A stretch of DNA of 64,000 nucleotides from Saccostrea cucullata. Its lineage: Eukaryota. This document shows positions 2,295 through 38,800 of the stretch, in pieces; positions within the stretch are counted from its first letter, which is position 1, and each line of letters starts with the position of its first letter. Location: positions 1-64,000 of the forward strand of contig NW_026923228.1 of assembly GCF_032062105.1 (NCBI RefSeq). Direction: 5' to 3'. The position numbers were made by a program, and so were the translations under genes. The notes beneath the pieces were generated by a model. That model was not told where the DNA came from and ran no database searches. It saw only the letters and a program-made list of their open reading frames with translations.

Positions 2295-5200
2295 CTATCA
2301 TTTCCTGGCGCCATTTGATGACGTGAAACAATGTTTTGCAGAACCCTTCTGCATCCAAAAGAGGAAACGGTGATAGCAACAATTAGTGCTTTGTGCGCCT
2401 AACACGTAGTGTCGCTAATGCAGAAGGTCAATTAGAAGTGCCCCTGTCTCATACATCACAGACTAATCTGTCTCCGATGATGGCACCGACTCTGAAATCA
2501 TGTGACAAAGCTGTACATTTCCTGCTTCGTTATGTAATACAGCTTGGTAAAAAAAATCTGAACACTGGATTAGTTCTGTTGGCTAACATAACAACGAAAG
2601 GCATTCCATGGCATATGTGTATAGATATAGAGATGATTGCTAGGAAGAACAAGATGACTGAAAAGAAATGTTATTATGAATATATAATGTACAATTGGTT
2701 GATTTTTCACCTTGTTAATAAAAAATTGAAGCAATATTTACCTTTTTCCTTATATTCTCATACAGAAACAATTCATTCATTATATGGTGGCATTTGAGTT
2801 TTTGGGGTACTAAGTAGTTTGGCGAAAGACCTATTGAACTAAATTTTACATTAAGGGGTCCTTAAATGGTTACAAATGTGAGTGTCACAAAAAAAACTGT
2901 AGATGCTATTTTCATCATATTTGCATTTTCTGGAAGAAATACTTGCGCTCATAAAGGAATTGTTCCATGAACTCTATGTGAACATGAAATAATTAAATCT
3001 TTTTTTGATATTTTTGTTTAGTTGTTTATTTAATGACTTGGAAAAACCAAAAAGGCATCAATCTTAAACCTATATACTTGGCATGTACGGTCTTTAAGCA
3101 GTAAGGAATAAAGTAGTGGTGGAACGCAAAATCAAAATATGTCTATGTTTAGGTACATTTAAGGATATCGAAAAATAATCAATTAAAAAAAATACAAACA
3201 ATACAAATCTGTTAAAAGGGCTAAAAACAAGACCTCTCCATCCCCGGAATTCCAGAGTTGGAATCAGATGTCAAAGAGGAGAAAACATCCCCTGTCAACT
3301 TATCACACCTGCCGTTAGCCCCATGTATTAATGAGAAGACAGGATATTGCTTTGTCACATTTATTATAAAACAAAGGCTTTATAATATTATTACAATAGG
3401 TATGAATAATGTCAGCAAAAAATACATATACGACCAGATTACATGTTTTATTCTCTTATCTAAAGATTCATCTACCGCTTAACCTTACGTGTATTGATTT
3501 TCAGTCTAGGAATTCCATAGATTTAATCATGTTTCTTGCTTTTTGATACATAAAGAACATTGAGACTGTTTCTAACATATAATCTAGAGGACAAACTCCA
3601 AGACCACCAACCGAGAACAGACGAAAGTCAAAATTACAAATTAATATAACTTTTGAAATAATTTCGATAATTCAACAAAATGTTCATCATAATTGAGAAT
3701 CTCAATCTTTATCACATTACCATTGTTTAAAGCAAATACATTAAATAAAACTCAGGATATTCAAAATCTAAATTCTGACTTAAGTCTGTTCTCGGTTCAT
3801 CGTCTCGGACCCAGGGCACATATCATACACAAAAATTAACATTCTACAGACTGTTACTAAAGTTCTGACAGTTGTATATAGCAGGAAGCATATAAGTTAT
3901 TCCTGAATAATTATGTTAATTACACCAATATACGCCAATCATATGAACGTGCAAACAATTCATTACAAAAAACGCTGGGTCTCTAGAATTCCAATAAAAG
4001 GATTGAGAAGTTGAATTTATTATCTTAGCTTGTGAAACGGCTAGTGGCTTTTCTACAATTTGTCTAGAAATGAAGAATGCAAAGGAATAGGTGATAAAAA
4101 TTTGAGTTATCCAATACGACCTGTTTATATTATTTCTGAGGAAATTTGCCTTTCTAAATATAACCAACCAAATTACTTTATTTTTGTGTTACATGAAATG
4201 GTCTTTCTAAAGATGCACGAATACAATAACAAAGTTGAAAATAACTGACAGTGAACGTTCTCAAAACTACAAGCACTACAAATATTTCATATGCTATGTA
4301 AATACTTTTATTAGATAAACACTTGCAATTAAAAAATGATATAAAGCGCTAAGAAAAATATACACAACATTTTACAATGAATCTAATTGACATTCCTTCA
4401 ATCATTTAAGAATGAATTCAAATTATCTATGTACTTCAAAAGTACCCCGAAATAATCGTCTTTACTCTTATGTAAGCCTCGAATTGTAAAAGAACAATAT
4501 TCCTTATGAAGGTACAAATTTATCTTACCAATAAACAACACTTTAAAATACTGTTTAATGTGATGATTATTAGAATTTGATAACATCTGATCAACAGACT
4601 AAGAATTTGTGTAATCAAGGTGTCATGTACTTTTTGCACGTTCTCGTATTCTTCAAATTGTCGACGGTAGGTACAGATAACATATCGATATTTTAACATA
4701 ATCATAAAGGTTCTATCTAGTCATCACCATTATATCTTCAATTAGCTTGGAATAATTATATCTTATTATCAGTAGACTTCGGGTTACATATGTAACCTAA
4801 CGTTCTGTCTGATTTCAAAAAAAGTTATCAAACCCGTCTTCTTATCTGCGTCCGTGTAGACATAAACGGTACATAGCAAACATTTAACTGATTATTTATG
4901 TGATTAAATGTACATTTTTCTAGAACTTGTGTACAAATATTTGAAAATAAAAGAATAACCAGAACATAATGCCACAATTCTCCTTTTCTCCCTCTTTCCA
5001 CATGAAACTCCATATGATGCAGACTTTTCTATAATTAGGGATAAAAAGTAGATATAAATCGATCATTCAAAAACGTTACAATCTTGCAAACTTTTTGACA
5101 TTCTCTAGATGTGCAGATGAAGAGCACATCGACTTTTTATCATATAAGGACTCACTGTTGACTCAGAGAAGTGCTTAAAAAACACCGAAGTACTTAGAAA

Positions 5201-7302
5201 TTAAATTTGGTCATTATTTTGTTCCCACTAAGATTGTTTGATTATAGACAACAAGACTACAATGACAAAACTCTAGACTACATCCACTTTACCCAGACAT
5301 CTGAGAAAATGGCCGCCCTAACTAACAAACATCAAGGAAACGGAAAACAGTCGTGTGAATTATACACTTACATCTGTTGTGAGAGTGGTTGCAAAACCTT
5401 TAAAATCTTGAAGTGCATTGTACTTTCAGAATTAAATCAAGTCAATTACGTTGTGTACAATATAATTGTAATCATAAGAGACAATCTCTAAAATGTACGA
5501 CTTCCAACTACACTTTTACAGACACAATGTTTTATAAAAATTGCTAATTTTGACGTACACTTGACAATCATCATAAAATATGTATAATAGTAGTATACTT
5601 CTCGATTTATCACTCTTGAGCTTAATGATTAAAAAATGAATCAAATATTATTGTTAAGATTATTAAGATTGTATCTGTTTGAAAATTCAAAACAAAACGA
5701 AAATGAAAATTAAGAAAATGTCTTCAGCTTCAAATCTATATAACGTTGTCACTTTATGATATATAATCACCATTAGTATTTAATGTTTTAAAACATTTCC
5801 TTATTTAATTGAATGCATAATTATTCTTATGATTATAATTACCTACGAGTACTTTACTGGCATGCTACGAATGCAAAAAGTAGTAGCCTACTGAAATCAA
5901 AGAAAGATATTGAGTCAATTGATATCAAAACAGTCACTAGAAACCTTACCGTGAAAACTCTTTTGAAAGAAAAAATATTCTTTTTAACTAAAAAATTGCA
6001 ATTATAATTAAACGAGTTTAAACAATTAACAAGTGATATTTCCAGTTAAAGGTATCTGTTAGCTAATATATTATTCTTTGAAAGGATTCCAAAACACCTA
6101 TATTCAAAATCACCACATGGTCCTGAATGGACTATCAAGATAAAGAACAGTGAGAGAGAAACATAAACATCTTAAAATTTCAGAGATGGATTAGGTGCCA
6201 TAAAGGAGTAAATAATCTCCTGCCAATCTTTCGCACATTAACATGTGCCCCTTGTTATTACTAGACAACAAATACCAAATGTTTTAAATTGAGACTTTTA
6301 GTATCTTTTATCATTAACTTCTCTATATACATGAAACTTACCTCGTTTAGAAACGGTTTTCATGTAGAGCATGTTCTTGAAGTTCATGTAGAACATATTC
6401 TAGCGTATGGAATCGGCTTGGAGAAATGACTTTGATATGTGCAATGGTATTTCAAAGCATAAAATCGGGAAGTTGACGTTAGGAAAATTGAGGATTGACT
6501 AGACACCATCATAATGAATAGTTTTTATGCATTACACAATCCGTAGACACTGCAGTTTGTGAATAATGTCCTAGCAATTGCTTTAATAAACCTTCTGCCT
6601 GGTGACAGTTGTATTTGTAAACACAGACCAGGTCATTGTATCGACTAAAGACTTTACATGCTATTGACTTAATATGAGATAGTTGAAACCCTTGTGTCAT
6701 CAATCTATTTATCAGAAGCTTAACTTCGCTTAAAATTGTTCATTCGTAATGTATTGGGTATCAAAAAGAATTGAACACATATTATTTGCTATTTACAGGT
6801 AATAATGGAACATGTATGGAGCTAATGAAAAAAAGGAAGGTTTACGACGGGGAAATTGAAAATTCAACTGTTATCACAAAGTAAAAAAACAAAAGAAAAT
6901 CTATCAATGTCTTAAAGTTGCATCTTTGAACACTGCCATTTAGATTTCTCTTGGCAAAAAGGTCACCTTTGCCACAATAAATGTACGGCGCCATATATCA
7001 AAGTTGAGCATTTTAGCTATTGAACACGGATGTAACCTTGATACATTAAGATTGGCCATCTCTTGGCAAAAAGGTCACCTTTGCCACAATTTAACACATT
7101 TAATGGCTTTTTCGTAATATCTCTAATGAAGGCAATTGTTTTGTTTTTTCAAAAGTAGGTTACGGTATATATTGTCATTATCATTGATCAGAAATCATAA
7201 CAGAAAACATCAAATTATAATGACTTCATTCGCCACAATGTAAATGTATTTCCATACATAATCAAAAAAATAAATAAATATGATGAGAATTCTATCGTTT
7301 AT

Positions 7303-7558
7303 ATAAGTTATTATTGTAAATAATGACCTTTATGTGACATGTTCTTGTATATTTCTTTATATTAAATTATTGTATAACAATGTCTCTTTTGTAATAGACT
7401 TATGCAATGTGTCATCCGGGCTTTACTTATGTAACTTGATTTACCCCTTTCCGTATTGTTTTCAACCAATCAGCAAAGCGCTTTGCTATCACGTGTCCAT
7501 TGTTTATCTTTTTGCCAGAAGAGAAAGTCACGTCATTTGTACTGCTCAATTTTTTGTA
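7303..7558 (+). repeat. Split direct repeat A1 (copy A2 at 13979-14234)
   Basis: Apparently identical 256-bp copies at offset 6676; contains CCAAT, CACGTG and CACGTCA promoter-type motifs. Confidence 0.95.
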
Positions 7559-7767
7559 TTATTCGCTTTAATTCCCCGGAAAACCCTGATAGTTTTGGAT
7601 CTAGCCATACTACTGAAGATTTGGGGTTATGTGATGCACGTATTTGTTTCACAGATACTATAGATTTCCTGCAAAAGTGAGTTTGTGTTTTGTTGTGAAA
7701 TCAGACAGTTATGTAAGTTTTATTGTGTAAGTGTTTACATCCGGGCAACGGAGAGGACTGTCACAAC

Positions 7768-8391
7768 ATGGACGATCGCAGTATTCTTCGTGTATCTTTG
7801 ATTGGACATTCTTTTATAAGACGCCTGGGATATTACATGAACAATTCAAGTGAATTAAGTAATCTAAAACTCAACGACGAACAATATTCGGTGACCGTGA
7901 ATGGCCGTGGAGGGCTAAAGTTAAGAGACAGTCGTCTATTTAGAGACTTGTTGAATTTTGAGGTGCTCCCCCATATTTGCTTTATGCAGATAGGAGAAAA
8001 TGACATTTTGCTAAGCAGTCCTAACAATATAGCAAGAGACATTTTATCATTAGCTTCATATATTCACCTTGGTGTAGGGGTACAAATTGTTTTAATTGGT
8101 CAATTGTTTAGACGTAGACCTTGGGCCTCATCTAATGACTTTAATGACCGTGTGATCCACATAAACAAACTTTTGATGAATGAATGTAAAAAACTGGACA
8201 ATATACACTTTTGGCATCACAGAGGCTTTTGGAAAAGCTTGGACTTTTTGAGCAAGGATGGTGTACATTTGCGCACACACTCGGAGCATCATGTTGTGAC
8301 ATCTTCTCCAATGCATCGATTCTGGCGGAGTATCCGCTCTGCAGTATTGCACTACCGGCATAAGACAGGCCAGTATATTAATTTTATTTAA
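7768..8391 (+). CDS. SGNH/GDSL-type hydrolase (esterase) encoded by the Ngaro element, about 207 aa from ATG 7768
   Basis: Block I LIGHSF (Ser), block II GRGG, block III IGENDI (Asn), block V DGVHL (Asp/His); open frame without stops. Confidence 0.85.
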   Translation: MDDRSILRVSLIGHSFIRRLGYYMNNSSELSNLKLNDEQYSVTVNGRGGLKLRDSRLFRDLLNFEVLPHICFMQIGENDILLSSPNNIARDILSLASYIHLGVGVQIVLIGQLFRRRPWASSNDFNDRVIHINKLLMNECKKLDNIHFWHHRGFWKSLDFLSKDGVHLRTHSEHHVVTSSPMHRFWRSIRSAVLHYRHKTGQYINFI

Positions 8392-8913
8392 GTCATGTAT
8401 GGTCCATTAAAAGTTGATAGGGCTAGCTCATGATTGAAGTCTCATGTTTTGGTCATTTAGATACTGCATATATACATGGCCATTAACATTATAATGCTCT
8501 AAAAGTTAACAATTGCTGGTTGCATTGGGCCAATGATTTTGGAAAATATTGATTTTAATAGAACGCTGAGAAAATGACGTGCAAAATAATTTCATAATGA
8601 ATGCTGAGTATTCTTACTTTTAGCATGATTAGGCATGATGTAAAAATTTTATCTGAAAAGTATGGTAAAACATGATGCAAGTTCATAATATACTTGCGAG
8701 ACCATATGCTCAGACTTAAACAGAAATTAATGCTAAGGGTAATGCTTATGGGGTACACATGAGCTGTGATTTAAGTTGGTACTGAGTAGTTTCTTACAAA
8801 TCACAATGATTTGCACAATTAAATGGTGGTGCAATATTGTATGCTTGAGTGTTGGTTATAAGTATAAGATGAATGAATAATAATTAAAAAAAAAAAAAAA
8901 AAAAAAAAATAAA

Positions 8914-9055
8914 TGTGCAGGACCATATGCACTTGCTGTATGTTGATAGGAAAAAAAAAATGTGCAGGACCATATGCACTTGCTGTATGTTGATAGAGAG
9001 AATTAAATTTAAAAAAAAAATTGTGCAGGACCATATGCACTTGCTGTATGTTGAT
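8914..9055 (+). repeat. Three copies of a 34-bp unit separated by poly(A) tracts inside the Ngaro element
   Basis: TGTGCAGGACCATATGCACTTGCTGTATGTTGAT starts at 8914, 8961 and 9022. Confidence 0.9.
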
Positions 9056-9060
9056 TGAGT

Positions 9061-9101
<41 letters not shown>

Positions 9102-9365
9102 AAAAGTTTCTTTTTTTTTTTTATCGCAATATTGTATTAGTAGATACAGGATCATATGCATCCAAAAAAAAAAAAAAAGAAAAAAAAGAAAAAATAAATA
9201 AAAATAAAAAGCTCTTCTGGTTTCAATGTTTATAATTTTAAAAATATGTTGAATGCATATAGCATGGTGAACTTGTTGTTGAATCAAATACATTGATTGG
9301 TTGGATATTTCAAATTTTATAAAGTGTGCAGAAGTAATACTTTCATTCTCTTGCAGAGATCTACA

Positions 9366-10370
9366 ATGCCACCGAAACGGAAGCAAACTCCAGCCAAAAA
9401 CCCAACAAAGAGGCAAAAAATGGCCACCAAGCAACCTGAAGTGACACCACAGCCTACTACAGCCATTGAGCACCCTGAAGTGATCCCGGGGCCTGCCTAT
9501 GGACAAATTGATTATAACAAACTAGCTGAAGCCATGTTAGCCATATCTAAGCAACAACCTGAAAACGCCCCCTCGCAAAACACATCAGATGACAGACAGA
9601 TGCCTGTGACCTTGGAATCTCCTTCCACATCTCAAAGTGCTGAGCCAGCAACGACTTCCACATTGGGAACTCTTTTGGATCAAATTTTCCTTGGGGACCG
9701 CTCTACACACAAGGACTTAAGCCCACTGAGTAAGACAATTTCTTTAACAGATGGGATTCCTCTCAGTTCCACGGTTTCACAAAAAACCAAAACTAAGATT
9801 TGGAATAATGAATTTGTTGACTTAAGATCTTTGTTAAGTGTACGAGATGAACCACTTTCAGTGTCAATTTCATCAGGCATTATAAATGTACAGCAGAGTC
9901 CAAAATTTAAATTCCCGATCAGTATTTCCCAATGGACAGATGCATTTTTGATATTCGCATCTATCTACATTGAGAAATTTCCCCAGGAGGCACCCCATTT
10001 GTTCAAATATTGCCACATGGTCAGAGAGATCCAACAGTTACATGGGGATAATGCCTTCAGGGCTTATGATGAACATTTTCGTAAACTACGAGAATCTGTT
10101 GTTGCACCTTGGCAAATTCCGGTGCAAGAACTAAGATTGAAAGCTATAACATTGCCCAAACCTGGTTATCAAAATAAGACCGCGTTAAATCAGCCCTTTC
10201 GAGTCAAATACTGTTACCAGTTTAACAAAGGGGAACGTTGCACAAGGTCCCCATGTCAATTCAGGCACAGCTGCATGCAATGCAAGGGCAATCACCCCAA
10301 AGTCAAATGTTCCTACTCCTTTAAATCAAACTCAAATTCAAAATCTACCAACCCCAATCAAGATAAATAA
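9366..10370 (+). CDS. Gag-like ORF1 of the Ngaro element (about 334 aa)
   Basis: ATG 9366 (MPPKRK) follows a splice-acceptor-like tract. Central helical block (KIWNNEFVDL...QWTDAFLIFASIY...FRAYDEHFR) and C-terminal Cys/His finger CYQFN-C-C-H-C-C-H-C. Confidence 0.85.
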   Translation: MPPKRKQTPAKNPTKRQKMATKQPEVTPQPTTAIEHPEVIPGPAYGQIDYNKLAEAMLAISKQQPENAPSQNTSDDRQMPVTLESPSTSQSAEPATTSTLGTLLDQIFLGDRSTHKDLSPLSKTISLTDGIPLSSTVSQKTKTKIWNNEFVDLRSLLSVRDEPLSVSISSGIINVQQSPKFKFPISISQWTDAFLIFASIYIEKFPQEAPHLFKYCHMVREIQQLHGDNAFRAYDEHFRKLRESVVAPWQIPVQELRLKAITLPKPGYQNKTALNQPFRVKYCYQFNKGERCTRSPCQFRHSCMQCKGNHPKVKCSYSFKSNSNSKSTNPNQDK

Positions 10371-11919
10371 GCTTATTCATATACTACAAGGCTATGATCA
10401 AGAGAAATTAAAAGTGATTTCAGAGGGTTTTTCACAAGGTTTTAAGCTAGGATGTACATCTCCACCTACAATGAAGATCTCTAGAAATCACAAAAGTGCT
10501 TTAGATCACCCTGTAGTTATTGATCAGTTCATTAGTGTAGGGAAAGAAAAGAGTCGAATCGCGGGACCATTCAAGGAACCACCTTTTCTAAATTTCATTT
10601 CTTCTCCTCTTGGAGTGGTTCCAAAATCAGAACCGAATAAATATAGGGTAATTCATGATCTCTCCTTTCCCAAATTTGATTCAGTGAACCTTGGCATTCC
10701 TGAAGAAAATTCAAAAGTACAATACGACTCAATTGATAATATAACTGAACTTCTTCGGAAATTTGGTAAAGGGGCTTTAATGGCAAAAGCAGACATTGAG
10801 GACGCTTTTCGTATTGTACCCATACACCCTGAAGACTACAAACTCCTAGGTTTCTCCTGGGATAGTAATTTCTATTATGATAAGTGTCTACCCATGGGTG
10901 CCAGTAGCTCTTGCCAAATTTTTGAGTGTCTCAGTACCAGTTTGCAGTGGGTTATGTGTGAAAAATTTGGTGCACCTGGCATGTCCCACATGTTAGATGA
11001 CTTTTTCTTTATAGGCCCACACCGGTCTGATGCATGCCAGGCATCATTACAGAGGTTTTTAAGTATTTGTCAAGAATCTGGTATACCCATCAAATCTGAA
11101 AAAACTGAGGGTCCAACTACTACATTGACAATTTACGGCATTGAAGTCGACTCTATTGAAATGGTCTGTAGATTGCCAGAGGCTAAACTCTTAAAAATAA
11201 GGGATAGGTTACACGAAGCCAAGAATAGGAAGAAAATAACACTTAAAGACTTACAATCTTTAATAGGGCTTTTGAATTTTGCCTGTCTGGTAGTTGTCCC
11301 AGGGAGGGCTTTTCTGCGTCGCCTCATTGATTTAACTTGTGGAATAACTCAACCCCATTTTTTCATAAGGCTTACTTGTGAGGCAAGGGCTGACTTGAGT
11401 ATGTGGTCCCATTTTATAGATAACTTTAATGGGAAATCGGTTATTCTGCCAGATATTTGGGCCTCTGCTGAAAAACAATTACTTTTTACTGATGCTTCAG
11501 GGTCATTGGGCTGTGCAGCTGTTTTGGGTAGAAACTGGTTTGCCCTGGGTTGGGACGCAATCAAAGACATGTCACATCAGCAAATCGCAATTAAAGAGAT
11601 GTTCCCAATAGTGTTAGCTTTAGAGATTTGGGGATCATATCTTGCCGATAGGAAAATACTTTTCATGTCCGATAATTTAGCTGTGGTGCACGCCATAAAC
11701 AAGCAAACATGCAAGGAAAAAACTCTCATGAAACTAGTTAGGAGACTTGTTCTTGTGACCCTTTCTCAGAATATTCTTTTTAAAGCTAAGCACATTCCTG
11801 GGAAAAGTAATACTTTAGCAGATCACCTATCTCGGTTTAAATTTCAGGAGGCCTTCAGGATAGCACCTCACTTGAATCCCAGTCAAACAGTGGTGCCCAA
11901 GGACCTCTTGTCGATTTGA
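10189..11919 (+). CDS. Reverse transcriptase/RNase H (ORF2) of the Ngaro element; the frame opens at 10189 with no ATG before the conserved N-terminal region
   Basis: RT motifs SPLGVVPK, YRVIHDLS, KADIEDAFR, LPMG, HMLDDF. RNase H motifs FTDASG, IKEMFPI, SDNLAVV, NTLADHLSR. Confidence 0.93.
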   Translation: MSPFESNTVTSLTKGNVAQGPHVNSGTAACNARAITPKSNVPTPLNQTQIQNLPTPIKINKLIHILQGYDQEKLKVISEGFSQGFKLGCTSPPTMKISRNHKSALDHPVVIDQFISVGKEKSRIAGPFKEPPFLNFISSPLGVVPKSEPNKYRVIHDLSFPKFDSVNLGIPEENSKVQYDSIDNITELLRKFGKGALMAKADIEDAFRIVPIHPEDYKLLGFSWDSNFYYDKCLPMGASSSCQIFECLSTSLQWVMCEKFGAPGMSHMLDDFFFIGPHRSDACQASLQRFLSICQESGIPIKSEKTEGPTTTLTIYGIEVDSIEMVCRLPEAKLLKIRDRLHEAKNRKKITLKDLQSLIGLLNFACLVVVPGRAFLRRLIDLTCGITQPHFFIRLTCEARADLSMWSHFIDNFNGKSVILPDIWASAEKQLLFTDASGSLGCAAVLGRNWFALGWDAIKDMSHQQIAIKEMFPIVLALEIWGSYLADRKILFMSDNLAVVHAINKQTCKEKTLMKLVRRLVLVTLSQNILFKAKHIPGKSNTLADHLSRFKFQEAFRIAPHLNPSQTVVPKDLLSI

Positions 11920-12824
11920 GCCCAATCAGTAGGCAATTGCTGACTTCATCTCTTTCATCATCCACAGCCCTAGCATATCGCAAAAGTTGGCAGTATTTAC
12001 TGAAATGGAAGCCAGGACTTTCACTACCAATATCGGTGACTGATGTATGTAACTTCATTGGTGTATTGTTCTCCAATAACTACTCCCCCAGTTCTATTTT
12101 ATCACATATGTCGGCTATCAGTTTTGTTCATAAAATTTGTAATATGTCAGACCCCACTCAGGCATTTGTGGTTAAGAAAATTCTTAAAGGCTGTCAAACA
12201 TTGGGCCCAAGGAAAGACACTCGCTTACCAATAACTGCACCTATTCTACAAAGACTAGTACAGGCCCTTGATCACACAGTCAAACTCTTCTCGCTAAGAG
12301 TGCTGTTTCGTGCAGTGTTTTTGATGGCTTTCCATGCGTTTTTAAGGTTAGGGGAACTAACAGTGAAATCTGCAAAGGGTAGCGATAAAGTTTTGCAAAG
12401 GGAAGATGTAACATTTGAACACAAATCAAACTCGATTGTAGGAGTTCAAATCATCATGAGAGAATACAAAACAAACAAACACAACAAACCGTTAGTAATT
12501 TACCTGCAAGCAAGTCCAAATTCCCAATATTGTCCAGTTCAGGCATTGTCTAACTATGTTCAAACTTTCAACCACAAGACTGGACCTTTGTTTCAAACAA
12601 TGGATGGTTCACCTGTGTCTTATTCATTAGTAACTACACATTTGAAGACTGCAATACAATTTATTGGATTAGATACAGATAGCTTTAAGGGTCACAGTTT
12701 CAGGATTGGTGCTGCTACTCATGCAGCCTCCTTAGGCTATTCTGAACAAGTTATTCAAAAATTAGGCAGGTGGAATTCTGATGCCTTTCGTCGATACATT
12801 AGAATCCAGTCATTTAAAATATAG
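11916..12824 (+). CDS. Tyrosine recombinase (ORF3) of the Ngaro element; start uncertain (frame open from 11841)
   Basis: Catalytic set R (FLRLGE), K (YKTN), HxxR (GHSFRIGAAT), W (LGRWNS), Y (RRYIR). Confidence 0.95.
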   Translation: MSPISRQLLTSSLSSSTALAYRKSWQYLLKWKPGLSLPISVTDVCNFIGVLFSNNYSPSSILSHMSAISFVHKICNMSDPTQAFVVKKILKGCQTLGPRKDTRLPITAPILQRLVQALDHTVKLFSLRVLFRAVFLMAFHAFLRLGELTVKSAKGSDKVLQREDVTFEHKSNSIVGVQIIMREYKTNKHNKPLVIYLQASPNSQYCPVQALSNYVQTFNHKTGPLFQTMDGSPVSYSLVTTHLKTAIQFIGLDTDSFKGHSFRIGAATHAASLGYSEQVIQKLGRWNSDAFRRYIRIQSFKI

Positions 12825-12930
12825 GCATTTGTAAATATACATTGTATTTCTCATTGACATACTCGACTCGATGCTACCATAAAAGCCTTCTCAGGGGTTT
12901 ACATTAAATGTCAAAATTACAATAGGTAAC

Positions 12931-13126
12931 TGATCTAAACCGTCTAAAGAAAACGTAACATACAGTCGGAACCAGGTCAGAAGTCATCTGTTGGTTTCGT
13001 ATTGTATCCATAAAGATTTATAGTCCGAAATGATCTAAACTGTCTAAAGAAAACGTAACATACAGTAGGAACCAAGTCAGTAGTCATCTGTTGGTTCCGT
13101 ATTGTATCCATAAAGATTTAAAGTCC
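12931..13126 (+). repeat. Two tandem 100-bp units downstream of the YR ORF
   Basis: TGATCTAAAC... starts at 12931 and 13031, with a few substitutions between copies. Confidence 0.9.
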
Positions 13127-13534
13127 CAATTACATTCTCTTTTGTTGGTCAGAAGTGGTCTGCAGCTATAGGGCCCAATTTGCATGCAGCTTAGCCTAGG
13201 TTTCACATTTTTGTTGACGGGGCAGAAGTCGTCTGCAATCAACAAGTCCAATACTAAGAACTAGAACTGCCATTGTGCCTGGCTTGTACCGGTAGTCCAC
13301 GTTTATTGTATTTTCCTAAAAGCATTTTTATAGTTGAAAGCCTTTTACAGTTTTCGATAACATTTAGTAGTTACTGTTGTATGTTTTATATTGTACCTGT
13401 AAATATGTAGATATAGAAACTTGTCTGATATTTACAATTTTAAAAATTTTATACATTTTTTTATGGCTTGTGTTTTGCGTCTCCTGCCAAGACGCCTTTG
13501 GGTGGGTGGATCCAATTTGCAATTGGATTGTGGC

Positions 13535-13981
13535 TGTGTTTTATGTTCTTTTACCCACCTTTTTTGATAGCAGGCAGCAATGTAACACATTTATTTTCAT
13601 GTATGTTTAGAACTTTTTATGTTTAATAGGGGGTCAACTGAAGATATATAATATGTATACTATACATGACAATGTTTTTCCAGGTTTTGATTTCTTAATT
13701 AGTCTGCTGGTTGATCCCCCTTTTTTCTATTGTATATCATTTACAATGACATTATGGTGCTGGGGGTCAGATTGTGCAATATTGTGATAAAGATATGTAA
13801 TATTTTATATTTAAGTCCCCTTTCCTGACCCCCTTTCTTGTATTGTAAATATGTTTTACTACTTTTACGTCATTTACTTCAATAAATGACATTTTTCACT
13901 TCAATGATGTTGTTTGTTTTTGCCTGCTTTAGCCAAAAAACAAGCTCAGTTGTCTGGCAGGAGAACTAAGGAACATAAATA
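13535..13981 (+). repeat. Split direct repeat B1 (copy B2 at 14262-14708)
   Basis: Apparently identical 447-bp copies at offset 727; each holds AATAAA followed by a GT-rich tract. Confidence 0.95.
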
Positions 13982-15149
13982 AGTTATTATTGTAAATAAT
14001 GACCTTTATGTGACATGTTCTTGTATATTTCTTTATATTAAATTATTGTATAACAATGTCTCTTTTGTAATAGACTTATGCAATGTGTCATCCGGGCTTT
14101 ACTTATGTAACTTGATTTACCCCTTTCCGTATTGTTTTCAACCAATCAGCAAAGCGCTTTGCTATCACGTGTCCATTGTTTATCTTTTTGCCAGAAGAGA
14201 AAGTCACGTCATTTGTACTGCTCAATTTTTTGTACCCACCATCCATCCCCTTCTTCCTCCATGTGTTTTATGTTCTTTTACCCACCTTTTTTGATAGCAG
14301 GCAGCAATGTAACACATTTATTTTCATGTATGTTTAGAACTTTTTATGTTTAATAGGGGGTCAACTGAAGATATATAATATGTATACTATACATGACAAT
14401 GTTTTTCCAGGTTTTGATTTCTTAATTAGTCTGCTGGTTGATCCCCCTTTTTTCTATTGTATATCATTTACAATGACATTATGGTGCTGGGGGTCAGATT
14501 GTGCAATATTGTGATAAAGATATGTAATATTTTATATTTAAGTCCCCTTTCCTGACCCCCTTTCTTGTATTGTAAATATGTTTTACTACTTTTACGTCAT
14601 TTACTTCAATAAATGACATTTTTCACTTCAATGATGTTGTTTGTTTTTGCCTGCTTTAGCCAAAAAACAAGCTCAGTTGTCTGGCAGGAGAACTAAGGAA
14701 CATAAATACATTTATTTCTCTTTCAATCTTCAAGATTATTGATTACAATGTACAAGGAAAACAGTAAATATTCTAACAAGCCTTTTTTTTTTTACTCCTT
14801 ACAAAAAAAATTACAGCAGTGAAGGAGAAACTTCAGTAGTACTGTAGGAATATTTACTCAATAACAGGTGTAAATCATATATGAACACTTATAAACTCAA
14901 AGAAACGTTTAGAAAACTTGAATTACATCATAACGTACACTTTGCTACAAATATTCCAATAGATTGAAGTCTAGGCTTTTTCACATCATAGACAACTGCT
15001 TTTCCGAGAAAAATGGAATTCATAATTAAATCTACCTTTTCGTTGATCATTTACTAAATTGTTTTGTTAAAAACTACCTGATTGTACACACAAGTACTCT
15101 AAAGTAGATACTAAAAATATTCTTGATTTTCTATGTCATTTTCGGAGAT

Positions 15150-15870
15150 TAGGTCTTCCAACAATCTTTGTGGAATTCCCCTGGATATATATTGTGCTTC
15201 GTTATAAGCAGACAAATAGTTTTATATTCAAATGATTGAAATTTATTCAAACCCTGTCTTTGAGAAAAAAGGACACACTTGCTTTACCCTTTATCTCGAC
15301 ATTTTGATATGTCGACGACGTCTTCTTTATTAGCAAATTTTCTTACCATTTATATGGCGACTCGTTATATGCAATTGGGATTGAAATAATTGATAGCACA
15401 GAGTCTAATACATATGATTCATAATAATATATTCTATTAGAAATCGACGAAACCTAACAATAAAGCTTTATCAAAAAAGAGATGATGACTTCAACTTTTC
15501 AATCGTCAACTTCCCTTACTTATGTAGCAATATACCATTATCACCAACAAATGGAATTTGCAGTTATTCGATTAGCAGGCTTTTCGTAGGAAAATTTCTG
15601 AAACGAGGCAAGCTATTGACAAACAAGTTTATGTAAAAAAAAAAGATATGAATAGTCTTGTTTAAAGTTATCAATTTGCAAGTTGTTTGCCGATTCAATG
15701 ACCATGTCAGCAAATACAACCTATCATTAAGTCACACTGACTGTTAGGAAATTCTGTCTAAGGTCTTTTCTTTTTCCTCCGCTCACCGTGACTAATCGAC
15801 AAAGGATGCTCACTCCTATATGGCACCTTGTTTTCGGTAGTCCGTGTTTTCTCTACTCCCGAATTGTATC
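15150..15870 (+). pseudogene. Decayed Penelope-like retroelement RT fragment
   Basis: Broken-frame motifs GIPL..CA.L.AD (15172), YVDDV, LEIIDSTESN, KRDD.FNFSIVNFPYLCSNIPLSP; many stops and indels. Confidence 0.7.
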
Positions 15871-35800: not shown

Positions 35801-38800
35801 TATCTTAAAATTATTTATTTTTAAAGTCATTGATTTCTGAAGGATAATACCGGTAGATATTAAGTCTGCTTTTTTTTCAGGGCATAGTAAGAGCTCTGAG
35901 AGAATACCAACAGAAGCTGATAGAAGGCAATGTTATTGTGTACGTCAGGAGGGCAGGGCCAAACTACCAGGAGGGGCTCAGGATCATGAGAGAACTGGGT
36001 GTGTATAATGGATGAAAGTTTTAAAAAATTATTTGTTTACTTCAAATTTTATTGAACTTAAACATTATCTTGTTAAAAAAAAGTTTTCTTTACTAAATTA
36101 AACAATTTGTACCTTTCTGATAATATTTTGCATGCTTGCAATAACTATTTAATAGGGATGTCAAAATATTCATTTTCCTTAGTCGAACATTCGATTGCAT
36201 TATTCGAACGATAGTCGACTATTCGGAACATTTTTTTCATAATAAAATCTTGATTTCCGTTTTACTTTCGTTTGCATAGACTATGCAAGATTTATCCTTC
36301 TTTGGTGTATGCATTATGCTTTTGACAGATATTCACAGGCACTTGACTTGTAGCTATTATGTTTACATGAAATTATATTTATTTAGTTTTATTATACATC
36401 AAAAACTACCAGCAAATATTTTTTAAACTCATTTAAATAAAATAAGATAAAAACAGCATCTACACGTCAGGTCCCCGTGTGCATGGTATGATATTGTTAA
36501 TTCCGATTACCGTATTAACTTTATAACGGTTAAATCCTCTAGCTTACAACACTACAAAGTATGCGTGTTTTTATAAAAATAATTATCAAATTATCAAAAC
36601 GTGTCTCGGCTATCGTACGTGAACCTTTGAACATGACTAAAATAACAATAGGCCCCTATTATGTATGCATGGAATGTAATGTCTAATTAACTGTGTTTTC
36701 ATTATAATTTTAGAAACAAAACCCAGCACAGTGATTCATAATTTATCAGAAAAACAATTGTTATTGACAATTATCAGATTATAGAAGAGGATTTATGCAT
36801 TTAACTTTTTCATAAATTTGTAATTAAGAGTTATCGCTCTTTTTTTATCGTATTTTATTTAGTCGATAGTCGGTCGCATTATTCGATGGTCGGTCCTTTC
36901 GACTGACAGTCGAATAGTCGACTATTCGTTGACATCCCTACTATTTAATATTTGTTTTTGCATTCTATTAAAATAATGATGGTTCATTAAATGTTTTTTA
37001 TTTTTATCACAGGAAATACCCTGGGAATTCCAATCCATGTATTTGGTCCAGAAACCCATATGACAGCTATTGTCAGTATGGCTCTTGGGAAAAGAGAGAT
37101 TCCATTAACACCACGGCCCATGAATACCACGGCAAACTTTTTGTTGCCAACTGGAGGGGTAGGTGTCTAAAAGCATATGTATAAACGTTCATTGTTATTG
37201 CTGTATAATCTCAGAGCATGCCAGTGCTTAACACCTGTTTTGTCAGGAATTAAAAATAACTGACGTTTTTTTTTTTTAAATGTAATCAGAACTTTCCACA
37301 GCATTAGCAGGAAATGCATATAAGTATTTAGCAATTCTAGCCCATTTAAAACCTTAAATATGAAAATAATTTTGATTATGAAATATTACAATTAGTGATC
37401 ATTTATTTTATCAAATTTCCAGGTTGTCCAGGTAATATTGAGCACTTTGATATTGTTATTAGTATAGCTGTAGTAATGTAACTTGTATGCAATATACTAT
37501 GGTGAAAATCCAGTGTAACAAATTTACTAACATTTTTCTACTCTTTTTAAAGAGAAGGGCACCTGCATTCCACCAAAAGAGCAGTTATTTTATCACAGTA
37601 CTACATATGTACACTTAATAGTAAAAACAGTAAACATTGGTGTATATTATTATAATTATATAAACTATATATAATAAACTTAAAAGAATAATTGCTTCAT
37701 GTGTCTGTGTCTGTTTGCATGTATTTTTTTTTTGGTACATTTGCTTATAAAGACATTCATGACAACATGTATGAAAATTTCCATATAAAACCTTCATCTA
37801 CCAGCCCCTTCAGATGCTGCATGCATGTTAACAGCATGCTGACTTGATTCAATCTAAATATTATGTTGAATATTTTTCTTCCCTAAAATTTATCTTTTGT
37901 TGCATTTTAATTCAATACATGCAGGCTTTGACACAACTGGGTCATGTATTTAAAACCTAATAACATATGTAAGTTATAGCTAAAGTGCACATGTAAATGT
38001 TATACATGAAAATTTTAATTTCTTGTTTGACATCATCACACTGTTTGTGGTTTGGTTTGAGGTACCTTTCACGGTTTACATAATATTTCAGGCTCCCTCA
38101 TTTTACTGCCAGCAGGGGATGTCTTTGGGGGTAAAGTTTTGATGTTGTATTGTTAGCATGCAGAGATTGTGATTCCTTTTTTTTCCTCCCATTTTTCATT
38201 ATTGAAAATGCAGCATTTATAGTTTCTTTTGCAAGATGAGTTTCCAAGAATAACTATCCTGAGTTTCTAGTGACTGCTGAAAGGCAATGCAATGTTAGTG
38301 TATAAGTTTATTGTGTTGATTTCTTCTCTTACAGTATTTCTATTGCATCACTTCCAATCAACAGACAAGACCAGTTCTCAAAAACTATTTTTTTTCCTTT
38401 TTTCCCTTGTGAAGAACTTTTAAGACAGAAGTTTTTTTTAGCATAATCTGTGAATTATAATTAAAAATGCTCCATCTGTTTCAGATATATTAAAATTTTG
38501 TAGTCTTAGAATAGTGAATATGAAATTTTGTCTGTCACTTTTTTCTTATGCTCTGAGTGGTGTTCCCATTTCATTACTTGTAAGAATGTATTTGAGAAAA
38601 AATATTCTACATATTTCTAGGTCTAATGATCCAAAAATTCAAATGAGGTTATCCATCAGCCATCTGTTGACTGTCAGATAACTTTTCAATTTTCAACTTT
38701 CTCTTCGAAACCACTTGGCCAAATTAAACCAAACTTGGGCTAACATACTAAGTTTATTAAAGATAATTATTTATTATATTGGCTAGGGTAAGTGTTATTC

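What the first reader, a model, noticed from the sequence alone, without database searches (positions are those of the whole stretch)
7303..14708. Young Ngaro retrotransposon with an intact SGNH hydrolase upstream of gag
Seen: four uninterrupted ORFs in the order SGNH-gag-RT/RH-YR, and A1/A2 and B1/B2 repeats with no differences I could spot, which implies recent insertion. The hydrolase keeps its Ser, Gly, Asn and DxxH blocks. Established: SGNH esterases occur in ORF1 of some non-LTR elements and, as I recall, as an extra ORF after YR in some Ngaro elements. Inference: a stand-alone 5' hydrolase is an unusual architecture and may mark a distinct molluscan lineage, with the enzyme perhaps acting on membranes or lipids during RNP trafficking.
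Basis: partly seen in the sequence, partly recalled or inferred. Interest (0 to 1): 0.82.

Follow-up and report, generated by a model that had tools for sequence, protein, structure and literature searches.

The report
Oyster Ngaro retrotransposon, hydrolase gene first
This is an intact, very recently inserted oyster jumping gene of the Ngaro type, from a lineage that carries its extra SGNH hydrolase gene in front of gag instead of behind the recombinase gene, which is a new layout of a known kind of element, not a new kind.

Summary
Window 7303-14708 (+) is a 7,406-bp Ngaro-type tyrosine-recombinase retrotransposon. Its split direct repeats are identical: A1=A2 (256 nt) and B1=B2 (447 nt). 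It has four open frames in the order SGNH hydrolase, gag-like, RT/RNase H, YR.

The 207-aa first ORF is a real SGNH hydrolase:
- The Ser, Gly, Asn and DxxH residues are invariant across 18 relatives.
- The AlphaFold model (pLDDT 91) matches PAF acetylhydrolase and GDSL lipases.

The layout is not a one-off capture:
- Four other diverged elements show SGNH before gag; three of them, all intact, continue into RT and YR.
- SGNH identity tracks RT identity (r 0.89).
- DNA similarity between relatives is confined to coding parts.
- All named relatives are pteriomorph bivalves. The nearest RT (479/482) is from Saccostrea cuccullata.
- A more distant relative (L009) has the published order, with the hydrolase after YR.

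New inference, not shown: the SGNH ORF probably lies in an intron (7677-9356). The element's only three GTRAGT sites sit just upstream of the ORF, and an acceptor-like site precedes the gag ATG in 6 of 6 elements where gag's upstream sequence can be read.

The hydrolase's role is unknown; a lipid or membrane role is only an analogy. I could not check Repbase or Dfam. Verdict: new variant of a known kind, moderate interest.

The parts
7303..14708 (+). Whole Ngaro-type YR retrotransposon (7,406 bp). It begins and ends with ATA, and there is no target-site duplication in the flanks.
7303..7558 (+). Repeat A1, identical to A2. It carries CCAAT (7466), CACGTG (7490) and ACGTCA (7530) motifs. That it is the promoter region is inferred.
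7559..7767 (+). 5' leader. Its only upstream ATGs open 1-, 9- and 1-codon ORFs. All three GTRAGT donor-like sites of the element's + strand lie here (7677, 7713, 7727).
7768..8391 (+). Stand-alone SGNH/GDSL hydrolase ORF, 207 aa, pI 9.9, intact. Catalytic S15, G49, N78, D164 and H167 are present.
7677..9356 (+). Putative intron of 1,680 nt that would contain the SGNH ORF: donor AAAA|GTGAGT, acceptor TTCTCTTGCAG|. This is inferred, not shown.
8392..9365 (+). A-rich non-coding spacer between SGNH and gag. It holds 39 ATG triplets, 47/61-nt tandem repeats and long A runs (8904-9211), and AATAAA at 8908 and 9193-9203.
9366..10370 (+). gag-like ORF, 334 aa. It has a conserved core and C-terminal CCCH plus CCHC-like zinc fingers shared with relatives. 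It has no Pfam or PDB sequence match.
10189..11919 (+). RT/RNase H open frame (576 codons, first ATG at 10471). It overlaps the end of gag in another frame. There is no methyltransferase domain.
11841..12824 (+). Tyrosine recombinase open frame (327 codons). It overlaps the end of RT by 78 nt in another frame.
12825..13534 (+). 3' untranslated part, with a 100-nt tandem repeat (12928-13127).
13535..13981 (+). Repeat B1, identical to B2. AATAAA at 13881.
13979..14234 (+). Repeat A2, identical to A1. It overlaps B1 by ATA.
14235..14261 (+). 27-nt unique pyrimidine-rich linker between A2 and B2.
14262..14708 (+). Repeat B2. AATAAA at 14608.

Best explanation
Shown:
- The region is one intact, very recently inserted copy of a Ngaro-type tyrosine-recombinase retrotransposon, in a Saccostrea-like oyster genome.
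- It belongs to an old lineage whose named hosts are all bivalves. In this lineage a stand-alone SGNH/GDSL hydrolase gene is the first ORF, between repeat A1 and gag. In the published arrangement the hydrolase comes after YR.
- The hydrolase gene is kept by selection. It is intact in the three diverged full elements. Its catalytic Ser-Gly-Asn-Asp-His set never varies. It diverges in step with RT, while all non-coding parts have diverged beyond recognition.

Inferred, about 0.4 likely: the full-length RNA starts in A1 and has the hydrolase as its first real ORF. A 1.68-kb intron (7677-9356) that contains the hydrolase ORF is spliced out to give the mRNA on which gag is the first ORF, followed by RT and YR through overlapping frames. 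The unspliced RNA would then serve as hydrolase mRNA and as the copied template.

Inferred, about 0.5 likely: the layout arose from the classical gag-RT-YR-hydrolase form by a shift of the terminal-repeat module. On a circle both forms read YR-hydrolase-gag.

Analogy only, about 0.25 likely: the basic, cytosolic-looking esterase acts on a lipid or acyl substrate to help the element's ribonucleoprotein at membranes, as proposed for the ZfL2-1 ORF1p esterase.
For: Structure of the element:
- Repeats and ORFs.
- Domains: RVT_1 E=1.2e-10 and Phage_integrase E=4.5e-7.

The first ORF is an SGNH hydrolase:
- Invariant blocks in 18 sequences.
- 13 of 18 relatives hit PF00657 and PF13472.
- The PDB profile search finds a GDSL lipase (3p94, E=2e-4) and the ZfL2-1 esterase (4c1b, E=9e-3).
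- The AF2 model has pLDDT 90.9. The top Foldseek matches are PAF-AH Ib and GDSL lipases, at probability 1.00 and TM about 0.6-0.65.

The layout is a lineage trait:
- L003, L004 and L005 have intact SGNH, gag, RT and YR in that order on one strand. L001 shows SGNH then gag.
- SGNH and RT clusters share contig lengths of 6171, 6993, 7793 and 6544 bp. Adjacent S. cuccullata genes LOC134253122 and LOC134253123 lie on one contig.
- SGNH identity against RT identity gives Pearson r = 0.89 over 24 pairs.
- blastn similarity between the window element and its relatives is confined to coding parts.
- L009 has a hydrolase ORF directly after YR, with the long untranslated part between it and gag.

Host: RT is 479/482 identical to XP_062604845.1 of S. 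cuccullata.

Splice signals:
- All 3 GTRAGT sites of the element lie at 7677-7732.
- An acceptor-like pyrimidine tract plus YAG lies within 12 nt of the gag ATG in 6 of 6 5'-SGNH elements. The crude combined p is 2e-4. L009 has none.
- The spacer holds 39 ATG triplets, so scanning ribosomes should not reach gag.
Against: - No RNA data were available, so splicing is inferred from sequence alone. L005 has no GTRAGT in its leader, and only 95 nt of L003's leader is on the contig. The six elements are related, so the combined p-value overstates independence.
- The window's own hydrolase does not reach Pfam's gathering score (13.4 against 23.6 bits).
- dN/dS was not computed, because no DNA of close relatives was available.
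- The RT was not placed in a tree with reference Ngaro elements.
- The hosts of L003-L005 and L009 are unknown, so 'bivalve-only' rests on named protein hits.
- L009's hydrolase is no closer to this family than to generic GDSL profiles (22 against 26 bits). A terminus shift and an independent capture therefore cannot be told apart.
- Gene conversion could also keep the repeats identical.
Confidence: 0.8

Rival explanations
1. One-off capture or nested insertion. A host SGNH gene, retrocopy or other mobile element landed in the 5' untranslated part of this one Ngaro copy, and the A-rich stretch after the ORF is its tail.
For: Long A runs and AATAAA motifs follow the ORF at 8880-9211. The ORF is separated from gag by about 1 kb of non-coding DNA.
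Against: The same SGNH-then-gag order, with a 630-970-nt spacer, is found in L001, L003, L004 and L005, whose RTs are only about 50-71% identical to the window's. SGNH and RT diverge together. Matched contig lengths link SGNH and RT clusters four times.
Confidence: 0.03
2. The layout is the same but there is no intron. The hydrolase is made from a short transcript that starts in A1 and ends at poly(A) signals in the spacer. gag-RT-YR are made from an internal promoter in the spacer, possibly a relic of the ancestral 5' region, or by internal ribosome entry on the full-length RNA.
For: AATAAA at 8908 and 9193-9203 lies inside the spacer. The spacer sits where the untranslated and repeat region lies in the classical form, L009. 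Donor-like sites are weak or unseen in L005 and L003.
Against: The acceptor-like site directly before the gag ATG is kept in 6 of 6 hydrolase-first elements, although the surrounding non-coding DNA is unalignable. It is absent from L009. The donor-like sites cluster in the leader.
Confidence: 0.3
3. The hydrolase-first and hydrolase-last forms come from two independent captures of SGNH genes by Ngaro elements, not from a shift of the termini.
For: GDSL ORFs have been captured repeatedly by unrelated retroelements (PMC5408684). L009's hydrolase matches this family only weakly (E=2e-6 by hmmsearch; hhalign probability 93%), no better than the generic Pfam GDSL profiles.
Against: On a circle the gene order is identical (YR-hydrolase-gag). 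Both hydrolases are stand-alone, about 200 aa, basic (pI 8.1-10.1), and align end to end, including the C-terminal helix.
Confidence: 0.4
4. The ORF is a chance open frame, or an SGNH relic that is no longer an enzyme.
For: The window's protein alone scores below Pfam's cut-off.
Against: All five catalytic positions are invariant over sequences down to 29% identity. The fold is predicted with confidence and matches active esterases. The ORF is intact in three diverged elements.
Confidence: 0.03

Closest known systems
Ngaro elements of fish and amphibians with a hydrolase ORF (e.g. DIRS-53_XT and DIRS-54_XT of Xenopus; Goodwin and Poulter 2004, as cited in PMC9210276)
   Same: Split direct repeats A1...B1-A2-B2 with identical copies. 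gag-like, RT/RH and YR ORFs in overlapping frames. No methyltransferase. One extra stand-alone SGNH hydrolase ORF of unknown function.
   Different: There the hydrolase ORF follows YR. Here it precedes gag, is set off by about 1 kb of non-coding spacer, and is bracketed by splice-like signals. The named hosts here are bivalves. I could not compare sequences directly, because no reference sequence was obtainable.
Locus L009 (contig JBNKJW010000143.1, filed under a Bacteroidales MAG): a Ngaro-like element with the classical order
   Same: gag with the same two zinc fingers, then RT/RH and YR (RT about 35% identical). It has an intact stand-alone SGNH ORF of about 200 aa with Ser, Gly, Asn and DxxH.
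   Different: The hydrolase follows YR closely (its open frame begins about 50 nt after the YR stop), and the long non-coding part lies between hydrolase and gag. There is no acceptor-like site before the gag ATG.
Esterase domain of ORF1p of CR1/L2/RTEX non-LTR retrotransposons (ZfL2-1, PDB 4c1b; PMC3905857)
   Same: An SGNH esterase encoded upstream of the polymerase in a retroelement. It is basic. It gives a weak profile match (E=9e-3).
   Different: There it is one domain of a multi-domain ORF1p with a coiled coil, and it takes the place of gag. Here it is a separate 207-aa protein in addition to a gag-like ORF, in an element with a different integration enzyme.
GDSL ORF3 of bdelloid Vesta LTR retrotransposons and Athena/Terminon Penelope-like elements (PMC5408684)
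   Same: A stand-alone GDSL/SGNH ORF with intact catalytic residues, carried as an accessory gene by a retroelement.
   Different: There it lies downstream of pol. The element classes and hosts are different, and those authors found no clear departure from neutrality.
PAF acetylhydrolase Ib catalytic subunits (PDB 1bwr, 1fxw, 1wab)
   Same: Best structural matches of the predicted fold (E about 1e-7, TM about 0.6). They are small cytosolic SGNH esterases.
   Different: Only 16-17% sequence identity. They are host enzymes, not element-borne. The match says nothing about substrate.

Membership tests
Ngaro (YR retrotransposons without methyltransferase) | Split direct repeats A1 ... B1-A2-B2, with the internal repeats downstream of YR | tested here: met
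   A 256 nt and B 447 nt, both pairs 100% identical, in the order A1-ORFs-B1-A2-B2. The definition is as given in PMC9210276 and PMC4157794.
Ngaro (YR retrotransposons without methyltransferase) | RT/RNase H ORF followed by a tyrosine recombinase ORF on the same strand | tested here: met
   RVT_1 E=1.2e-10, with weak RNase H hits. Phage_integrase E=4.5e-7, above its cut-off.
Ngaro (YR retrotransposons without methyltransferase) | No methyltransferase domain (this separates Ngaro from DIRS1-like and PAT-like elements) | tested here: met
   Pfam finds no such domain in any ORF. The RT/RH frame ends right after RNase H, where YR begins.
Ngaro (YR retrotransposons without methyltransferase) | RT groups with reference Ngaro elements in a phylogeny | not testable with these tools
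   No reference Ngaro sequence (Repbase) could be obtained. The protein hits are unnamed or 'uncharacterized'.
Ngaro subgroup with hydrolase (fish and amphibians) | Hydrolase ORF located after YR | tested here: not met
   Here the ORF lies at 7768-8391, between A1 and gag. L009 does show the published position.
SGNH/GDSL hydrolase superfamily | Four conserved blocks with catalytic Ser (I), Gly (II), Asn (III) and Asp-x-x-His (V) | tested here: met
   S15, G49, N78, D164 and H167 are invariant in alignment A1.
SGNH/GDSL hydrolase superfamily | Three-layer alpha/beta/alpha fold with a parallel sheet, matching solved members | tested here: met
   AF2 pLDDT 90.9 and pTM 0.89. 149 PDB matches at E<=1e-3; the listed top matches are mainly SGNH esterases.
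SGNH/GDSL hydrolase superfamily | Pfam Lipase_GDSL / Lipase_GDSL_2 above the gathering score | tested here: inconclusive
   The window's protein scores 13.4 bits against a cut-off of 23.6. 13 of 18 relatives match at E<=0.01. L003 and L005 pass PF00657's cut-off.
SGNH/GDSL hydrolase superfamily | Esterase activity | not testable with these tools
   No biochemical data.
Non-LTR ORF1p esterases (CR1/L2/RTEX) | Esterase is a domain of the multi-domain ORF1p (with a coiled coil) that stands in for gag | tested here: not met
   This is a stand-alone 207-aa protein whose model is a single SGNH domain. A separate gag-like ORF is present. The sequence link to 4c1b is weak (E=9e-3).

The most novel reading that the evidence does not exclude
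The hydrolase gene sits inside a conserved 5' intron of the retrotransposon. The unspliced RNA would be both the hydrolase mRNA and the copied template. The spliced RNA would be the gag-RT-YR mRNA. This is a retrovirus-like use of splicing, but with the roles of the two RNAs reversed, and I found no report of it for tyrosine-recombinase retrotransposons. If so, the layout arose by moving the element's termini around a fixed circular gene order.
Probability: 0.35. Interest if true: 0.7.

Novelty: new variant of a known kind. Interest (0 to 1): 0.5.

Why it matters
Accessory enzymes of retroelements are poorly understood. No role has been shown for the Ngaro hydrolase since it was described.

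A lineage that keeps the same enzyme but moves it to the front of the element shows two things. The gene is under long-term selection in the element. And its position relative to the termini is free to change, which fits replication through a circle.

If the intron reading is right, it gives a simple testable case of how a retrotransposon with four genes shares out translation between an accessory enzyme and gag-pol. The family is young and present in several farmed and wild oysters, so transcript and population data that bear on this already exist or are easy to obtain.

The work also shows that animal retrotransposon contigs are filed in several bacterial MAG records.

Tried and rejected
I could not fetch the roughly 6-7-kb contigs that hold the closest SGNH relatives. 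Co-location of SGNH and RT on them rests on equal contig lengths and adjacent gene ids.
I repeated it with the closer set A2.
- Scans of viral contigs with the SGNH alignment and with the RT found nothing.
- Rfam found nothing in 6500-15500.
- A PDB sequence search with gag found nothing.
- Goodwin and Poulter 2004 is not held. Its content is cited through later papers.
- A search for the host of the Sedimenticola MAG found no paper.
- The exhaustive protein search (search of protein representatives) was not run. The protein was not left open, the search is costly, and its library carries no names, so it could not settle the host range.
- dN/dS was not computed. No DNA of relatives closer than about 51% amino-acid identity was available, and synonymous sites are saturated at that distance.
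- The two exons of the splice model were not joined. Exon 1 is non-coding, so nothing needed searching, and the joined step is left out.
- The nested-insertion reading was rejected; see the rival explanations.
- No contig looked human, and the window contains no N.

Full report
**1. The observation**

The coordinates and the description are right.
- Exact extension of the repeats gives A1 7303-7558 = A2 13979-14234 (256 nt) and B1 13535-13981 = B2 14262-14708 (447 nt), with no difference in either pair.
- B1 and A2 overlap by ATA. The same three bases begin and end the element.
- A 27-nt unique linker separates A2 from B2.
- The flanks show no target-site duplication.
- This is the A1-internal-B1-A2-B2 'split direct repeat' layout that defines Ngaro and PAT-like elements (PMC9210276; PMC4157794).
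- No other copy or fragment lies in the 64-kb window. The window has no N.

**2. The four reading frames**

All four are on the + strand and none is interrupted.
- ORF of 207 aa from its ATG: 7768-8391.
- gag-like ORF, 334 aa: 9366-10370.
- RT/RNase H frame: open 10189-11919, overlapping the end of gag by about 180 nt.
- YR frame: open 11841-12824, overlapping the end of RT by 78 nt.

Domain evidence:
- Pfam gives RVT_1 (E=1.2e-10), weak thumb and RNase H hits, and Phage_integrase (E=4.5e-7).
- No methyltransferase domain is found, and there is no room for one.
- The gag-like protein has no Pfam or PDB match. It shares a conserved core and two C-terminal zinc fingers (CCCH, then a CCHC-like one) with the corresponding ORFs of four related elements.
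- For both RT and YR, similarity to relatives starts upstream of the first ATG. These frames are therefore probably reached from the preceding frame.

**3. The first ORF is an SGNH hydrolase**

- Alone it scores below Pfam's threshold (Lipase_GDSL 13.4 bits).
- It has 32 relatives by word search and 82 by profile, all stand-alone proteins of about 190-230 aa.
- In an alignment of 18 of them (29-58% identical to the window's protein), the Ser of block I (G-H-S), the Gly of block II, the Asn of block III and the Asp-x-x-His of block V are invariant.
- 13 of the 18 match the two Pfam GDSL families.
- A profile of the family finds a GDSL lipase (3p94, E=2e-4) among solved structures. More weakly it finds chain 4c1b (E=9e-3), which is the ZfL2-1 ORF1p esterase (PMC3905857).
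- The AlphaFold model is confident (pLDDT 90.9, pTM 0.89).
- Its best PDB matches are the catalytic subunits of PAF acetylhydrolase Ib and bacterial GDSL lipases (probability 1.00, TM 0.6-0.65).
- Matches to viral proteins are generic SGNH domains.
- The protein is basic (pI 9.9), and its model is a single domain with no extra segment.

**4. Host and age**

- The RT is 479/482 identical to XP_062604845.1 of Saccostrea cuccullata. That protein lies on another contig, so at least one near-identical sister copy exists.
- The species is a pteriomorph oyster.
- Zero differences in 703 nt of repeats gives a 95% upper bound of roughly 0.4-2 million years for assumed rates of 5e-9 to 1e-9 per site per year. 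The rate is an assumption, and gene conversion could also keep the repeats alike.

**5. Is the hydrolase-first layout a trait of a lineage?**

The metagenome scan gave L001, a decayed relative. Its SGNH carries three in-frame stops and its gag at least one frameshift. SGNH (51% identical) is followed 630 nt later by gag on the same strand.

The scan of prokaryotic genomes with an RT alignment returned animal retrotransposon contigs that had been binned into bacterial MAGs. L003, L004 and L005 each carry intact SGNH, gag, RT/RH and YR in that order on one strand. Their SGNH ORFs match the Pfam GDSL families.

| Protein | Identity, window vs L003-L005 |
|---|---|
| RT | about 50% |
| YR | about 40% |
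| gag | 25-33% |
| SGNH | about 30% |

Indirect links add at least three more families:
- SGNH and RT clusters share contig lengths of 6171 bp, and of 6993, 7793 and 6544 bp.
- The S. cuccullata genes LOC134253122 (RT) and LOC134253123 (SGNH) lie on one contig.

Over eight elements, SGNH identity follows RT identity (Pearson 0.89 over 24 pairs; the pairs are not independent). Nucleotide similarity between the window element and all relatives is confined to the four coding regions. Repeats, leader, spacer and the 3' part give nothing.

So the hydrolase has been inherited with the element and kept under purifying selection. A one-off capture is excluded. All named relatives of both proteins are pteriomorph bivalves: Saccostrea, Ostrea, Pinctada, Mytilus, Mizuhopecten and Argopecten. 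The hosts behind the MAG contigs are unknown.

**6. The classical form, and what differs**

L009 is a more distant element (RT about 35% identical). Its contig closes on itself with a period of 5,367 bp.
- It has gag, RT and YR.
- An intact SGNH-like frame opens about 50 nt after the YR stop. It matches Lipase_GDSL_2 (E=1.7e-5) and the family profile (E=2e-6; hhalign probability 93% over the whole length).
- Its long non-coding part lies between the hydrolase and gag.

This is the published Ngaro arrangement (PMC9210276, PMC7192593).

Read round a circle, both forms have the order YR-hydrolase-gag. They differ in where the repeat and terminus module sits: after the hydrolase in L009, before it in the window. 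Since these elements are thought to pass through a circular form, a shift of the termini is a simple route from one form to the other. Independent capture cannot be excluded, because L009's enzyme is no closer to this family than to generic GDSL profiles.

**7. How gag could be expressed behind the hydrolase**

On a full-length RNA starting in A1:
- The only upstream ATGs open ORFs of 1, 9 and 1 codons, so the hydrolase ATG is the first real start. A1 itself holds CCAAT, CACGTG and ACGTCA motifs.
- About 1 kb with 39 ATG triplets separates the hydrolase stop from the gag ATG, so ribosomes should not reach gag by scanning.

Two observations suggest splicing:
- All three GTRAGT sites on the element's + strand lie at 7677-7732, in the leader just upstream of the hydrolase ATG. 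L004 has GTAAGT in the same place.
- A pyrimidine tract plus YAG lies within 12 nt of the gag ATG in the window, L001, L003, L004, L005 and L006, although the surrounding DNA is unalignable. A crude score gives a combined p of 2e-4. L009, which needs no such intron, has none.

The model is an intron 7677-9356 that contains the hydrolase ORF.
- The unspliced RNA gives the hydrolase and must be the copied template, since copies keep the ORF.
- The spliced RNA gives gag, RT and YR.

This is inference from sequence, and I rate it about 0.4. The main rival is an internal promoter in the spacer, with poly(A) signals at 8908 and 9193-9203 ending a short hydrolase transcript.

**8. What the enzyme does**

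Nothing here shows a substrate. The closest functional analogy is the ZfL2-1 ORF1p esterase. It is catalytically active, binds negatively charged phospholipids, and was proposed to help ribonucleoprotein assembly at membranes (PMC3905857). The basic charge of the present proteins (pI 8.1-10.1) is compatible with that. But here the enzyme is a separate protein beside a gag-like protein, so it is not a member of that ORF1p family. GDSL ORFs have also been picked up by rotifer LTR and Penelope-like elements (PMC5408684).

**9. Novelty and limits**

- A hydrolase in Ngaro elements is known. In the papers I could search, its position ahead of gag, its persistence across a diverged lineage whose named hosts are bivalves, and the splice-like signals around it are not described.
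- I could not consult Repbase or Dfam, where such families may already be recorded.
- I could not place the RT in a tree with reference Ngaro sequences.
- Verdict: a new variant of a known kind, of moderate interest to transposon biologists.

Noticed in passing
window 51737-51808 (+): A tRNA-Asp (anticodon GTC) gene predicted by ARAGORN, far from the element.
   Followed up: no
L003-L010 (contigs of JBEVXV01 'Sedimenticola sp.', JBNKJW01 'Bacteroidales bacterium', JALUWF01 'Mariprofundus sp.'); also protein hit P0122 named Ca. Thiodiazotropha endolucinida: Complete or partial animal Ngaro-like retrotransposons are filed in bacterial MAG records. This is most likely host DNA binned by mistake.
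   Followed up: partly
L005 1-10620: Two head-to-tail units of the element (period 7,137 bp), with B2 directly followed by the next A1. This is either a tandem or concatemeric insertion, or an assembly path through the repeats.
   Followed up: partly
L009 3614-4222 (+): An intact SGNH-like ORF directly after YR in a distant relative. This is the classical Ngaro order, and it serves as a natural comparator for the hydrolase-first form.
   Followed up: yes
window 14235-14261: A 27-nt pyrimidine-rich stretch between A2 and B2 with no counterpart after A1 or before B1. Its role in the repeat scheme is unexplained.
   Followed up: no
window 12928-13127 and 8904-9211: A 100-nt tandem repeat (2 copies, 92-93% alike) lies in the 3' untranslated part. 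A 47/61-nt tandem repeat and A runs of 38-47 nt lie in the SGNH-gag spacer.
   Followed up: partly
window 6947-6978 and 7059-7090: An exact 32-nt direct repeat lies 112 nt apart in the 5' flank of the element. Its meaning is unknown.
   Followed up: no
window 2393-2797 (+), 35333-35830 (-), 54198-54608 (+): The only other ORFs of 130 aa or more in the window. They were not examined.
   Followed up: no
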